Source: Pocillopora damicornis
Lineage: Eukaryota
Assembly: GCF_003704095.1 (NCBI RefSeq)
Contig: NW_020846987.1
Span: 62,001-125,497, forward strand
Length of the DNA stretch: 63,497 nucleotides
Reading direction: 5' to 3'
This document shows, one piece after another, positions 43,778-50,530 of this stretch. The first letter of the stretch is position 1, and the number at the start of each line of letters is the position of its first letter. The translations under genes were made by a program, and so were the position numbers. The notes beneath the pieces were generated by a model that searched no databases, had not been told where the DNA came from, and was given only the letters and a program-made list of their open reading frames with translations.

Positions 43778-44863
43778 ATATCAAAAAGCTGATCCGAGAG
43801 CCAAGTGGTGAAAGTGTTATTAGAACAAAGCATCGTAATGGTGCTTAACTTATAGCTGTAAATTCAATTGACGCGTTTTATTAACTGTCTGTATATTCGG
43901 AATTTGACGGCAGATGCCTTGATAGAACACAAAGTGGCAGTTTATTGGAGCAATTTTGCAGAACAGACTGTGATAAATTATTCACAAAACAGTAACATGA
44001 TTTAGTCAAACAGAACGGGGATCTTTCTTTACAACAGCAAGTCATTTTTGTAAAGAAGGATAACCGAAACCAAACCAGAACAATCTACGAAAAACTGTGA
44101 CAAAAGGTTAGTGACAAAAACATGAACCAGGCGAAGTTAAAAAATTGGCGACTGCAGATTAATTCAAGCAGTTGGAATGTCGGTCGCTGTTTTCTTAGAG
44201 AATAATTGAGATATATTGCTCCCCTTATCAACAATAGGAAAGTCTTTTTTTCCAGGGTACAATGGCGGAAAATGGTTTGCCTTGCATATTTTAATCAAAA
44301 GTGTCAAGAAATCGTTCAACAAAGCAGTTCTGGTGACTTTCGCGATAAGGAAAAGACGGAAGGGGGGGAAGGGGGGGGAAGATGACAATGAAAAAAAGCT
44401 GCACACAAACCCGAGTTCATCTACCGTATTAATTTTTAAGTTGTTACAAGAACTTGTTTCCGCCGATGTTTCCTTTTATTCTACATATATGAACAGAACA
44501 TCTTGTTTTGATCAGCTTTCCACCGTATATTAAACTTGTACATTGTCGTAATTTTGAAGTGATTTTTACAAAATAGTTACTTGGACGTAACAAAAAGGAT
44601 CCGGAAAACGTTGTTTCCTTAGCTCCCTATAAAGTGCACAATAAGATTGTAAGTTGACTCAAGATAGCCGAAGTGTATCATAACTTCAACCAAATGTTAA
44701 ATACTGTTAGTAATGTTGATTCGATGCCAGAGTATGCTACGTTACTTCGGATCCTGTAGTTTTGTCGAAGCTTTCGGTCACTTTGTGAATGTGCCCCTGA
44801 CCAAATAAAGAGCTGTTTCATTCTCCTTTCCCATAAACGTGGCAGAAGTTCTCTGGTGCGACA

Positions 44864-45928
44864 TTATAGGTCGACAATTTCAGGTCCTTGATATTCATGC
44901 TTCATTCTTTCTTTTACCATGGTAACACTGTTCATAAGCTCCTCCATGCTCGGTCGCTGATCGGGGTCACCTTTGACGCAATCACGAATCGTGGCTTTAA
45001 GCTCGTCAGAGAAATTTTCATTGATATCTGGAGGCGGTCTGCCCTCCATAATGTTTGCCAGAGCAGTAAACATGTCATTCCCTTCAACTTGATAGGCGGG
45101 TTCAAGTGCTGTGATCTCGTACAGTAAACATCCAAGAAGCCACACCTGGCTTTCGGGGCCAAAGGCGTGTCCTTTCATGACCTCCGGGGGTGAATAGAAC
45201 CCCGCTCCATCAACCCTGACATCAGGGTCATTCATCGTATCCTCCGGGGATGATTGGTACAGCAAACCACTGTCTAATTTGAGGTTTCCATGTTCGTCGA
45301 AGGAAATACGCTTCGTCGCTTTAGCAGTCTTGTAGAAAATGCCTTTCTCATTCAGATACTTCATAGCGGAGCACAATTCGCAAAACGCTTTCCATATCAA
45401 GTACTCGGGCAAATGCCTCCGTAGTTCTCGCCGCTCCCTGATAATATCCTCCAGTGAAACTGGAGGGTATTCGAATACAATTATTTCCGTACCACCTTGA
45501 TGAAAGCGCAGAAAACTACGCATGATATTTGGATGGTTGACATCTTTCCAAGCTTCCATAGCGGCCTGAAAATGATCATCTACTAGACAAGGCATGACGC
45601 ACTTAAGCAATACCTCTGACATGTCCAGAAGACACTTAGCAGGATAAACGCAATTCAACATGTTCTCTGAGCTCAAGTTATTTCGGTTTACAAAGAAATC
45701 GTCCACAGTGAGCTGATTGGCTAGATAGTTGATCATTGTCTTTGGAATTGGAAGATCTACGATGCGCGCTAGTCGTTTCAAACCCACAGCTTGTAGAATG
45801 AATGTGCGGCAGTGTTGTTGGAGGGAGCCTGGTTGAGGGTCGAAAGAGGAGAACGCTCCCTCCGGGTTCAGAATGTTAAATCTTGCTTGGTCTGTGGACG
45901 AGTCCTGCAAACGCGTTCTTCTCGCCAT
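44864..45928 (-). CDS. Intronless SOCS-box + NEK6/7-like pseudokinase (354 aa)
   Basis: Single ORF. aa ~33-70 [31 protein letters not shown] fits SOCS box (BC box + LPxP cullin box). Kinase fold: [69 protein letters not shown]. Gly loop absent, HRD replaced by FYKT, DFG/DLG region reads LDSG. Confidence 0.88.
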
Positions 45929-46813
45929 ATGTTAGATATCGGTCAGCTTTCTTAGCTGGTACGCGCACAGACTTCGAATCATGTGCTCGCGTTAATTGAA
46001 AACCTCATCAATACATTTAAGCAATTAATTAGCTTTGTGCGTCAAGATGGCATTCGAATGCCGGAAGCTTTGTAAAGCTTGCCGCACTTCAAAGAGCTAA
46101 AAGCAATTTGAGTCAGTTTTAGCCGTCGGAAGGCCTACCAAAAAATGAAAAGAACCACTGATGAAAAAAGGGCCTTCGGCGCGAAATACTTGCTACTACA
46201 ATCTAAAAGATATATATATTTATCATTCTTGAAATCATCTTTCTTGCGTTACTTTATCTACGAGCACTAACACTACCTAACAAGCGATGTTTTGAAGATT
46301 TTAGATATATGAATTTCATATATATAGATAGATATATGAATTTCATATATTTGCACGGAATTTCGTATATTTGCCCGCACGGGCCTTTTCTTATTGCGAT
46401 AGATGTGGATAGTTATTGCATATGCGCACTAGCAAAACAATAAATCACATTCGAACCTATTTTAGGCGGTCACCCACGGGGAACGGCGGAGCGACCGCTA
46501 AATACAGGTTGACGGCTTAATACCGGTTTCATAGAAAAGGGTTATTGTAAAAAAACGATAAAAATCGGCATTTTATGTCATAACGGAACACTTAATGTAC
46601 CACAACTTGCTCAAAAATACTAATTACATTGATTTCGGCATATAAACATAATTTTACTTTAAAGATCATTCTTAGTTTGATTTGAGTGGTTCCACTTTAG
46701 GTAAACATTCATTACAGGTAGAGGGCAATACAAACAGACCATTGGGACTCAGTGAAGGTTGACCAAAATTGCTACATAGAGGTGACCGCTTAATAAAATC
46801 AAAATTACAGGAA

Positions 46814-47628: not shown

Positions 47629-50299
47629 CTATCTCCAGAAAGGTCTTTTGTTATTCTGCAATCTCTGAAGACATCTTTGAGAACAAATAAAACTCTCTGC
47701 TGGAATGTGGCTTTGTGTAGGACAAGCAGACACAACTGTATGAGCTAGCTGATGAATATTGATAGTTATAATGTGGTGGACACACGATGTGAAGCAGTAG
47801 TTTCCACAAAAACACTGTTTTGCTGTGTCCAGAAATACACATAGAGAGGATGGAATGAGTTGTTTGAAGTATGCACACCTGCCGGAAGAAGAGAAGAGAT
47901 TGGTAGTCAGAAAAGTTGCTGCAAAAGAGGAGTTTGTATTTCAATGTGGAGACACATGACCAGTGGCTGTGACTATTTTCTGTGACAAACTTTTCTGTCT
48001 GAAAAAGTTCCTATGACTTATTTTAGTGCTGTCTCACTAAACCTTTTAACTCCCAGAAGTGATTAATATGCAACCTCTTCCTTTAATATCCATACATTAC
48101 CCAGCAAACAGGTACTGAGAATACTCAAACTTATCAGGTAGAAATTGCTACCTTGATCTAACACTAAATTCTCTGAACTGATTAAAAAGGAAATGTTTGG
48201 CTGTTAGAAGGGAGAATTAACAGTCAGATCTTGGTAGTTTAAAGGAGCCAAATTGGATGTGGTTGTCTGGGGTATCCTGAGGCTTCAACTGTGGAATACC
48301 ACCCTCATGGCTGGCAAACCCCTGCAACTCTGTCCTGAGGCCTCATAAACCTCAGCAGTAATAACTTCTCACTAACCTGAGTGAGAGGTCTGAACTGGAG
48401 AATTTTGGCCCATTTTATTTACAGACCATGTACAGCAGCATGGTCTGTACAAAAACAACTGAGGGCCAATTTCTCCAAGTACAGCTCATATAAGCAAGGT
48501 TAGTTAGAAGTTAATTACAAACTTGTTTATTATGAATTTTCCAGCTTTCACCAACAAAAATATACCAGATATACAGTTTGTTCATATGGCAAAATCCTGA
48601 ACAAAGTAAGAACTTATTAGAATGCCAAGAATTAATTCAGAACTATCTTTCCATATAATAAAAATAACAGGAAATTCTCAATGAAATTTCAAGATCACTT
48701 GTTAGTAATACTCACTTGTGCTTCTTGACAGCAATTCCTGCACATTCCTTCAATGATGGAACAGCCAATTTGCTAACGTTGTACCACTTATCCTGAGCTA
48801 AAAATGGGTTTGCAGATACATCAATGGAATCCAATTTTAACTTGGATAGGCTGTAAGGTAAGACCTTTAGCTGGTTGTGACTGGCAGAGAGGAATCTCAG
48901 ATGTGAAAGACTTCCAGTATTTATTGGTAACATGTGAAGACTGTTCTTATCAAGTTTTAAATGAACAAGGTTCTTTAAGTTACAGAATGTCACAGGTAAA
49001 AGCTTTATTTCATTTTGACTGAGATCTAAGAGCTTCAAGGATGATGTCAAGCTTCCAGAACACAACAAAGATGGAAATTCCCTGATCCGATTGCCATGCA
49101 AAATTAGCTCTGATAATGTTGAGAAACTGGCCAGTCTGCAAGGGATTGCCCTCACTTGATTGTCAGCAACATTCAAACATGACAAGCTCTTCATTTGTAA
49201 AATGCGTGCCTCAATACGCACAATTCCACAGTTGTTTACAGTCAACTTGTCAAGCTTACTTAGAAATGGCTTTCCAAGAGGATAATCTGCTCTACGTTTG
49301 ATCACCATTTCAGTTTTGGGCTTTTCTATTTCAGAGATCTTTGCAGGAACCAGACAGGATAGGTTGACATTTTCCAATGCTTTATCTCCAAGCTTGAGTA
49401 AAGATAAAAATGTTTTCAGACTTGATGGGTCAGCCTGTTGACAAAGTAAACAACAAATGATACAAGGGAATGAAAAAATTAACTTAGTAATTCCCCATAG
49501 TTTCTTGGTGCTAAGGATGGAGGGGAAATGAAAAGAATTGAAAAGAAACTTCAGAACAATTAAACTACTGTTCAACACAACAGCTGATGAACAATATGCT
49601 TTCGACATCAGGAAACATTGTTATAGACATTCTGAAGCTACTAATTCGTTGGATTGATCAAAATCAAGTCATCTAATAGGACATCTGCAATCATTTTCTT
49701 TACACCCCCTTCCTTATTCTCTTCTCGTAACCCCATCCCCTCTTCCACCCTATGCGCTAAATCAGAGACTACTTTTTGCATATTCGGCAGTCAATACCTT
49801 GTTGATGAAGAGGTCGTGTGGAGGTTCTTTAAAGCGAATCGTAGCTTTGCCTTTTTCGAGAAACTTGGAGAAGACCTGCTGCAGGTTTTCTTTGATCTGT
49901 AACGAGTTCAAAGGATCGATAACAAATAAAAATCATCGAAATAATACTTGTACTTGTACTATCAAGCTACAATAAATGTACTACATGTATCAAAAACTAA
50001 GTAAAAGCTCAGTGCATAATCGAAAAAAAAATTAAAAATCACACAAAATGCAGTCAAATTTATAAGGAAGAGAATGCTCAAATTTAGCAGCCTCGCACAC
50101 CACACACCTTGTATTTAGCTCCATTCCTCTCTTTTGCTGTACAAACTAAAAGAAACACGTTCTTTCCTCTCTCATCGTCAAGTTTCGAAGAATCTTTTCG
50201 CCCGATTGCTAAAGAGGCGCGCGCAGGCTTGCTTGCATTTCGCACGTTGTGAGAAGCAGCTATACGATTTACGATCGATATTTCACAGTTTATACGCAT
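47629..50299 (-). CDS. LRR1: Leucine-rich repeat protein 1 (PPIL5), CRL2 substrate receptor
   Basis: Exons 50299-50108, 49896-49798, 49434-48716, 47878-47629 in phase. N-term [48 protein letters not shown]; LRRs ([40 protein letters not shown]); BC box VPSLKECAG; Cys-rich C-term CFCGNYC..CSQRC. Confidence 0.92.
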
Positions 50300-50530
50300 T
50301 CTTGTTTTTTCGGATGAAAATACTTCTAAAAGAATAACATTCAACAACCTTCCCCCCAGCTTGCCGCCATATTTTGACTCTAATCACGTGTTTACTTTTG
50401 ACCAATCGTTAGCAATTAGAAGCCTTGAGCCCGCGATAATGTTCGAGAGTCCAACTAACCCTCACAAACCTTCGATTCTTAATGATTGCGGTCGAATAGT
50501 TTAGTTTTCCCTCATATTTCTCTCTCAAAC
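50300..50530. promoter_or_regulatory. Putative bidirectional promoter LRR1/TBCB
   Basis: 231 bp between divergent start codons; YY1-like gccgccatatttt (~50363), tcacgtg E-box, CCAAT at ~50402. Confidence 0.6.

What the first reader, a model, noticed from the sequence alone, without database searches (positions are those of the whole stretch)
44864..45928. Intronless N-terminal SOCS-box fused to a catalytically dead NEK6/7-like kinase
Seen: [21 protein letters not shown] precedes a kinase fold with NEK6/7-like signatures ([15 protein letters not shown]; [16 protein letters not shown]; [10 protein letters not shown]). It lacks the Gly-rich loop and HRD and has a degenerate DFG-equivalent. Established: SOCS boxes recruit Elongin B/C-Cul5 and are usually C-terminal; NEK7 has a kinase-independent scaffold role for NLRP3 and binds NEK9. 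Inference: a possibly retroposed pseudokinase repurposed as an E3-ligase substrate receptor or decoy that targets NEK6/7 partners such as NLRs or NEK9. I know of no described family with this architecture.
Basis: partly seen in the sequence, partly recalled or inferred. Interest (0 to 1): 0.8.

Follow-up and report, generated by a model that had tools for sequence, protein, structure and literature searches.

The report
SOCS-box NEK7-like pseudokinase gene family
This stony-coral gene is real, conserved and probably expressed; it joins a ubiquitin-ligase docking motif (SOCS box) to a catalytically dead NEK6/7-type kinase fold, and belongs to an old animal family I found described nowhere that probably hands bound proteins to a Cullin-5 ligase.

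Summary
Window 44864-45928 (minus strand) is one uninterrupted 354-codon ORF. Residues 32-70 are a Pfam SOCS box (36 bits, cut-off 23.5) with textbook BC-box and Cul5-box motifs. Residues 75-340 are a kinase fold closest to NEK7 (E 2.5e-27; next NEK1, about 1e-15). It lacks the glycine loop and the HRD aspartate and has DSG in place of DLG.

It is not a one-off. Orthologues of 354 aa occur across stony corals (67-81% identity, dN/dS 0.06-0.09), and Nematostella has one of 357 aa (50%). A profile search found about 27 clusters with the same architecture, including a jellyfish, anemones, limpets and an annelid. On a kinase-domain tree all 34 SOCS-bearing sequences sit on one side of a 100/100 branch, and all are pseudokinases.

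This genome also holds a second paralogue and a separate intron-rich canonical NEK6/7. The scan had already found that paralogue on other DNA (s1-770012), and its follow-up reached the same reading.

A fold with coral Elongin C gave weak support (0.45; best control 0.02). PolyA RNA-seq assemblies from four studies hold the sequence.

Most likely this is a Cul5/Elongin BC substrate receptor that uses a dead kinase as its recognition module. Its targets are unknown; the NLR/NEK9 idea is untested. Six literature searches found no description.

The parts
44864..45928 (-). Complete single-exon coding sequence, 354 codons plus TAA
   Evidence: identical protein on three metagenome contigs
45863..45928 (-). 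Residues 1-22: conserved N-terminal motif (MARRTR..FNILNP), specific to this subfamily; function unknown
   Evidence: alignments A1 and A2; helix at residues 10-15 in the deeper AF2 model
45719..45835 (-). Residues 32-70: SOCS box
   Evidence: Pfam 36 bits; profile matches ASB7/ASB9/ASB8/SOCS4 SOCS boxes; three predicted helices at 36-48, 53-58 and 63-70, with block-mean pLDDT about 72-83 over residues 31-70
45797..45826 (-). Residues 35-44: BC box [10 protein letters not shown], the Elongin C-binding helix
   Evidence: L36, Q37, C40 and R41 are at least 90% conserved across 40 family members; weak pass when folded with coral Elongin C
45722..45754 (-). Residues 59-69: Cul5 box [11 protein letters not shown]
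   Evidence: L59 and P62 are invariant in 40 family members
44909..45706 (-). Residues 75-340: NEK6/7-type pseudokinase domain, starting directly after the SOCS box
   Evidence: pLDDT mostly 80-97
45644..45673 (-). Residues 86-95: position of the glycine-rich loop; no glycine is left
45596..45613 (-). Residues 106-111: VLLKCV with the retained beta-3 lysine K109 (at least 90% conserved in the family)
45308..45337 (-). Residues 198-207: degenerate catalytic loop; HRD is replaced by YKT, so the catalytic aspartate is absent
45266..45274 (-). Residues 219-221: DSG in place of the DLG of NEK6/7
44867..44908 (-). Residues 341-354: C-terminal tail ending in the conserved Y.GP.IV.L
44475..44480 (-). 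AATAAA about 385 nt after the stop codon; a possible polyadenylation signal (inference only)
   Evidence: no more frequent than chance; a transcript of about 1.5 kb would fit the 0.63-0.71 share of words held by polyA RNA-seq runs

Best explanation
The ORF is a functional host gene of a stony coral. It encodes a member of an old metazoan family in which an N-terminal SOCS box abuts a NEK6/7-derived pseudokinase. Shown: the gene is intact and under strong purifying selection. Its architecture is conserved from cnidarians to molluscs and an annelid. Its catalytic machinery is lost in every member. Its SOCS box carries canonical BC-box and Cul5-box motifs. Inferred mechanism: the BC-box helix binds Elongin C (with Elongin B) and the LPxP box recruits Cullin-5/Rbx2. 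The dead kinase fold then acts as the substrate-recognition module, so the protein is a CRL5 substrate receptor that delivers a bound partner for ubiquitination. This is a pseudokinase adaptor in the manner of Tribbles, built on the chassis of an ASB or SOCS protein. The substrate is unknown.
For: The gene is real and constrained. There are orthologues of 354-357 aa in many corals and in Nematostella. Among coral genera dN/dS is 0.06-0.09 with dS above 1, and dN is among the lowest in the SOCS box. The LRR1 gene sits upstream on the same strand in four coral genomes. PolyA or oligo-dT RNA-seq assemblies from four studies hold 38-71% of the sampled words. SOCS box: Pfam 36 bits; the N-terminal profile matches ASB7 (E 1e-5), ASB9, ASB8 and SOCS4 boxes over their whole length; 27 of 38 family representatives fit a strict BC-box plus Cul5-box pattern and the rest fit one half; L59 and P62 are invariant; three helices are predicted. 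The genome encodes Elongin C. Folded with coral Elongin C, the score is 0.45 against a best control of 0.02; the runs share at least 89% of contacts and the partner's pLDDT is at least 53. The verdict is 'weak support': the mark was reached by 51 of 78 solved complexes and 2 of 108 mismatches, but only 5 of the 78 solved complexes scored 0.60 or under, as did all 4 mismatches that passed. The prior from the motifs was high. Pseudokinase: the Gly loop and the HRD aspartate are absent in all 34 representatives, and the fold is confidently NEK7-like. Single origin: all SOCS-bearing kinase domains fall on one side of a branch with 100/100 support.
Against: No binding, ubiquitination or substrate has been measured. 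The complex prediction is only a weak pass. It could also reflect the model's memory of solved SOCS box-Elongin C complexes. The SOCS box is N-terminal, unlike classical SOCS-box receptors. In the jellyfish-containing clade the LPxP box is degenerate and Pfam scores fall below the cut-off. The beta-3 lysine is conserved, so nucleotide binding or a residual activity is not excluded. The expression evidence is k-mer presence in assembled contigs, not mapped reads.
Confidence: 0.6

Rival explanations
1. The protein is a non-degradative regulator or decoy. The pseudokinase binds a NEK6/7 partner or NEK6/7 itself and modulates it allosterically. The SOCS box only sets the protein's own half-life or tethers Elongin BC without ubiquitinating a substrate.
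For: The domain keeps NEK6/7-specific surfaces such as the CLLD strand and the PE..IWK helix. NEK7 is known to act as a scaffold and to dimerise (PDB titles). Some clades have a degenerate Cul5 box but keep the BC box.
Against: The Cul5-box residues L59 and P62 are invariant across 40 diverse members. That conservation is hard to explain unless cullin recruitment matters.
Confidence: 0.22
2. It is an atypical but active kinase that uses displaced catalytic residues, with the SOCS box directing its turnover.
For: K109 is at least 90% conserved. An acidic residue (D or E) is kept at the DFG position in this subfamily, and the PPE motif is kept.
Against: The catalytic aspartate and the asparagine of the catalytic loop are missing. 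All glycines of the Gly loop are missing in every member. The alpha-C glutamate aligns to alanine.
Confidence: 0.05
3. It is a dead retrocopy of NEK6/7, or an annotation artefact, that happens to stay open.
For: The coding sequence is intronless while the parent-type gene is intron-rich.
Against: dN/dS is 0.06-0.09 with synonymous sites saturated. Length and motifs are conserved between stony corals, anemones, a jellyfish and molluscs. The sequence is present in polyA RNA-seq assemblies.
Confidence: 0.01

Closest known systems
ASB proteins (ankyrin repeat and SOCS box; ASB7, ASB8, ASB9)
   Same: The SOCS box is closest to theirs in solved structures and aligns over both the BC box and the Cul5 box. 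Presumed use as a Cul5/Elongin BC receptor.
   Different: ASB boxes are C-terminal, after ankyrin repeats. Here the box is N-terminal and is followed at once by a kinase fold. There are no ankyrin repeats.
NEK6/NEK7 kinases
   Same: Closest active kinases by sequence and fold. They share the CLLD strand, the HPN motif, the PE..IWK..QLCSA helix and the GCLLYE helix.
   Different: The Gly loop, the HRD aspartate, the catalytic-loop asparagine and the alpha-C glutamate are lost. The NEK N-terminal extension is replaced by a SOCS box. It is not the orthologue: this genome has a separate multi-exon NEK6/7 with exons 80-91% identical to vertebrate NEK6. The tree separates the two groups 100/100.
Tribbles pseudokinases (TRIB1-3)
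   Same: The same working principle is proposed: a pseudokinase domain binds the substrate and a short motif recruits an E3 ligase (abstract of PMC5382568).
   Different: Tribbles recruit COP1 through a C-terminal peptide and derive from a different kinase group (from my own knowledge). No sequence relationship was seen here.
Classical SOCS, SPSB and WSB SOCS-box receptors
   Same: A modular receptor made of one recognition domain plus a SOCS box.
   Different: Their recognition domains are SH2, SPRY or WD40, and the box is C-terminal.

Membership tests
SOCS-box proteins (Pfam PF07525) | Profile match above the curated cut-off | tested here: met
   36.0 bits against 23.5. Paralogue 31.1 bits, Nematostella 30.9 bits.
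SOCS-box proteins (Pfam PF07525) | BC box (S/T/A/P)-L-x3-(C/S/A)-x3-(aliphatic) | tested here: met
   [10 protein letters not shown] at residues 35-44.
SOCS-box proteins (Pfam PF07525) | Cul5 box L-P-phi-P followed by a hydrophobic ...(Y/F)L | tested here: met
   [11 protein letters not shown] at residues 59-69. L59 and P62 are invariant in 40 members.
SOCS-box proteins (Pfam PF07525) | Three-helix fold | tested here: met
   The AF2 model built on 40 sequences has helices at 36-48, 53-58 and 63-70, with block-mean pLDDT about 72-83 over residues 31-70. This is a prediction only.
SOCS-box proteins (Pfam PF07525) | Binds Elongin C/B | tested here: inconclusive
   Score 0.45, best control 0.02, verdict 'weak support'. 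Elongin B was not included.
SOCS-box proteins (Pfam PF07525) | Recruits Cul5/Rbx2 and supports ubiquitination | not testable with these tools
   Needs biochemistry.
NEK6/7 protein kinases | Kinase domain closest to NEK6/7 | tested here: met
   NEK7 E 2.5e-27 against NEK1 about 1e-15. All chains listed at ranks 1-20 of the Foldseek table are NEK7.
NEK6/7 protein kinases | Intact catalytic motifs (GxGxxG, HRD, DLG) | tested here: not met
NEK6/7 protein kinases | Orthology to NEK6/7 | tested here: not met
   A separate canonical gene lies on contig C2255. The two groups are split 100/100 on the tree.
Pseudokinases | Kinase fold lacking at least one of the beta-3 Lys, HRD Asp or DFG Asp | tested here: met
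   The HRD aspartate is absent here and in all 34 representatives.
Retrogene | Intronless copy of an intron-bearing parent | tested here: met
   No coding intron here, against about 9 in the canonical coral NEK6/7.
Retrogene | Direct marks of retroposition (poly-A remnant, target-site duplication), or proof that intronlessness is ancestral | tested here: inconclusive
   The family is too old for such marks. The Nematostella and Patella members have introns at other positions, one of which may coincide with a canonical one. The SOCS box lies in the same exon, so this is not a simple retrocopy.

The most novel reading that the evidence does not exclude
The family is a degradative antagonist of the NEK6/7 pathway. 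The dead NEK6/7 fold still recognises what NEK6/7 binds, such as a NEK9-type activator, NEK6/7 itself through back-to-back dimerisation, or LRR domains of the NLR-like proteins that I recall are expanded in corals. It hands that partner to Cul5 for destruction. This would be an ancient ubiquitin switch on mitotic, ciliary or innate-immune signalling that vertebrates have lost.
Probability: 0.12. Interest if true: 0.85.

Novelty: new variant of a known kind. Interest (0 to 1): 0.62.

Why it matters
SOCS-box receptors are known with SH2, ankyrin, SPRY, WD40 and GTPase recognition domains. Pseudokinase E3 adaptors are known mainly from Tribbles. A SOCS box fused directly to a dead NEK6/7 fold would add a new class of Cullin-5 receptor and a new fate for a kinase domain. 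The architecture is conserved between cnidarians and lophotrochozoans. No vertebrate member appeared in the searches.

The family is present in Nematostella, where knock-down, knock-in and proteomics are possible, so its substrate can be found directly. Automatic annotation currently calls these genes 'Nek6-like' or 'Nek7-like' kinases. That is misleading for kinome counts and for expression studies in corals.

Tried and rejected
- **Read laying:** Transcript ends, UTR introns and strand could therefore not be seen.
- **Complex prediction:** A later try ran.
- **ESM Atlas:** gave only generic kinase clusters.
- **Logan contigs L024 and L025:** searched for a poly-A tail or splicing. L024 is collinear with the genome and shows no poly-A, so it does not tell RNA from DNA.
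- **Taxon of the third subfamily (P0203, P0218, P0222 and relatives):** it is absent from this genome. The last word search returned only unnamed proteins.
- **Spliced genes:** the exons of the Nematostella and Patella members, the canonical NEK6/7 and Elongin C were mapped exon by exon only. Database proteins were used as given.
- **Retropseudogene reading:** rejected on dN/dS and deep conservation.
- **Symbiont or contaminant origin:** rejected because of the metazoan neighbours, the synteny among corals and the orthologue in Nematostella, which has no algal symbionts (my own knowledge).

Full report
**Observation.**
Window 44864-45928 on the minus strand is one ORF from ATG to TAA of 354 codons. 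Pfam finds a SOCS box at residues 32-69 (36.0 bits, cut-off 23.5, E 8e-9) and a protein kinase domain (79.9 bits). The best solved relatives are all NEK7 (E 2.5e-27); NEK1 follows at about 1e-15 and NEK2 at 1e-13. In the residue-level alignment to NEK7 the glycine loop has no glycine left, HRD reads YKT, the catalytic-loop asparagine is gone, and DLG reads DSG. The beta-3 lysine (K109) and the APE-type motif remain.

**Organism and context.**
The relatives are stony corals and sea anemones. The window is part of a 234,350,878-base assembly in 4393 contigs. From memory these figures resemble a published Pocillopora assembly; I did not test that.

The LRR1 gene lies about 2.8 kb upstream on the same strand. 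Its PH_LRR1 exon is at 50087-50347 and its LRR exon at 48715-49608. The same neighbour precedes the orthologue in three other coral genomes. This is a host gene in conserved microsynteny.

**The gene is functional.**
About 29 proteins of 354-372 aa share the whole architecture. Identity is 67-81% among stony corals, with named examples from Oculina and Montipora, and about 50% in Nematostella. Coding sequences from four other coral contigs give dN/dS of 0.06-0.09 with dS above 1. The SOCS box and the segment after it are among the regions with the lowest dN. One coral carries three recent tandem copies (dS 0.025-0.04).

PolyA or oligo-dT RNA-seq assemblies from four studies hold 38-71% of the sampled words of window 44300-46500. 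I worked beside those places from then on.

**The SOCS box.**
Residues 35-44 ([10 protein letters not shown]) fit the BC box and residues 59-69 ([11 protein letters not shown]) fit the Cul5 box. A profile of the N-terminal 55 residues from seven members matches the SOCS boxes of ASB7 (E 1e-5), ASB9, ASB8 and SOCS4 over their full length.

With 17 sequences AlphaFold left this part uncertain. With 40 diverse members it predicts three helices at 36-48, 53-58 and 63-70, with block-mean pLDDT about 72-83 over residues 31-70 and an overall pLDDT of 84.7.

The genome encodes Elongin C, and a full-length coral Elongin C was recovered (P0086). Residues 26-80 were folded with Elongin C residues 27-122. 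The score was 0.45 against a best control of 0.02. The runs shared at least 89% of contacts and the partner's pLDDT was at least 53. The tool's verdict is 'weak support'. The mark was reached by 51 of 78 solved complexes and 2 of 108 mismatches. However, only 5 of the 78 solved complexes scored 0.60 or under, as did all 4 mismatches that passed. A like complex is also known, so the pass may come from the model's memory. Given the motif evidence the prior was high, and I read this as modest extra support.

**The kinase part.**
The fold is confident (pLDDT 80-97). All chains listed at ranks 1-20 of the Foldseek table are NEK7, with TM 0.79-0.83 over the target. It begins at residue 75, directly after the SOCS box, so the box replaces the N-terminal extension of NEK6/7.

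It is not the coral's NEK6/7. A canonical gene lies on contig C2255, with about nine introns in the kinase domain and exons 80-91% identical to vertebrate NEK6.

**The family.**
A profile of 17 members was searched against 1.84 billion representative proteins. It found about 27 clusters (at 50% identity) of 308-460 aa whose match starts in the SOCS box. Pfam confirms the box in most of them. Named members include:
- the jellyfish Rhopilema esculentum
- the anemone Actinia tenebrosa
- a second Nematostella paralogue
- the limpets Patella vulgata and P. caerulea
- more weakly, the annelid Owenia fusiformis

The limpet and annelid proteins also share the segment between the box and the beta-3 strand. 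This genome has exactly two members: the window gene and a 338-aa intronless paralogue on contig C1673 with 32% identity.

A careful maximum-likelihood tree of the kinase domains alone (65 rows; I left out 17 long or redundant rows) puts all 34 SOCS-bearing rows on one side of a branch with 100/100 support (the quick tree of 82 rows agrees). There are three large groups plus the bilaterian group. The taxon of one group is unknown.

All 34 lack the glycine loop and the HRD aspartate. The fusion and the loss of catalysis are therefore old, most simply older than the split of cnidarians and bilaterians. One caveat applies: pseudokinases may attract each other on a tree. The shared SOCS box and linker, which were not used for the tree, are independent support.

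The closest active kinases to the profile are NEK6/7-type. The unrooted tree cannot show that the family is the sister group of NEK6/7.

**Introns and origin.**
- The coding sequence is uninterrupted in this coral, in four other corals, in the 48%-identical P0026 lineage, in the jellyfish and in the unnamed third group.
- The Nematostella orthologue has three coding introns, one holding a Pao-type retrotransposon.
- The limpet gene also has three.
- Mapped onto one alignment, the Nematostella introns (window residues about 140, 212 and 261) do not coincide with the canonical NEK6/7 introns (about 113, 128, 147, 164, 179, 200, 239, 271 and 310).
- One limpet intron (about 114) may coincide with a canonical one. 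By my rough estimate that could be chance.

This fits an ancestrally intron-poor, retrogene-like kinase part with later intron gains, but it does not prove it.

**Mechanism.**
The best-supported reading is a Cullin-5/Elongin BC substrate receptor whose recognition module is a dead NEK6/7 fold. The gene's integrity, its constraint, its architecture, the loss of catalytic residues, the motif-level SOCS box and the presence of Elongin C are shown. Binding to Elongin BC and Cul5, and the existence of a degraded substrate, are inferred.

The main rival is a non-degradative decoy or scaffold whose SOCS box only sets its own turnover. The invariance of the LPxP residues across 40 members argues against that rival. 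However, the jellyfish clade has a degenerate Cul5 box. A residual kinase activity is unlikely. The conserved K109 keeps nucleotide binding open.

**Novelty.**
Six full-text searches found no paper describing a SOCS box joined to a NEK-like or any other pseudokinase. Databases name these proteins 'Nek6-like' or 'Nek7-like'. The scan had already met the paralogue of this genome (s1-770012), and its follow-up reached the same family-level reading, which I re-derived here independently.

I class it as a new variant of a known kind: a SOCS-box receptor, or equivalently a pseudokinase E3 adaptor, with a new combination of parts.

Noticed in passing
window 48715-49608 and 50087-50347 (minus strand): These are exons of an LRR1 gene (PH_LRR1 plus LRR). 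From my own knowledge, LRR1 is itself a cullin-RING (Cul2) substrate receptor. It lies directly upstream on the same strand. The same pairing occurs in three other coral genomes (L022, L026, L027) but not in Nematostella (L004).
   Followed up: partly
G000:C1673:70461-71390 (L006 1432-2448): A second intronless SOCS-box pseudokinase of 338 aa, 32% identical, with HRD replaced by HTE. It belongs to a separate subfamily with anemone members. The scan already reported it as s1-770012.
   Followed up: partly
L027 10001-11065, 14317-15381, 19159-20223: Another coral has three tandem 354-aa copies of the gene on one strand, duplicated recently (dS 0.025-0.04).
   Followed up: partly
L004 6001-15328: The Nematostella orthologue has three coding introns. 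The first holds a Pao/BEL-type retrotransposon ORF of 1483 aa.
   Followed up: partly
L036 5001-6017; L035 5001-8783: The jellyfish member lies within the span of a large ankyrin-repeat gene on the opposite strand. The limpet member lies within the span of an RNA polymerase subunit gene on the opposite strand.
   Followed up: no
G000, many contigs (e.g. C871:12083-37161, C2075, C3577, C3459): There are dozens of uninterrupted kinase ORFs of 250-600 aa, several in tandem clusters. This looks like a large expansion of intron-poor kinase genes in this coral.
   Followed up: no
proteins P0191, P0195, P0196, P0197: These are giant predicted proteins of 1900-2900 aa with 5-10 tandem kinase-like domains related to this profile. 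Their organisms are unknown. They may be real multi-kinase proteins or fused gene models.
   Followed up: no
protein P0245: A NEK6/7-type active kinase is fused to an IFT57 (intraflagellar transport) domain in an unnamed organism. This is either a link to cilia or a merged gene model.
   Followed up: no
window residues 1-22 and 346-354 of the ORF: An N-terminal MARRTR..FNILNP motif and a C-terminal Y.GP.IV.L motif are conserved in this subfamily and absent from the paralogue. They may be docking or PDZ-type motifs.
   Followed up: no
It lies outside the gene.
   Followed up: no
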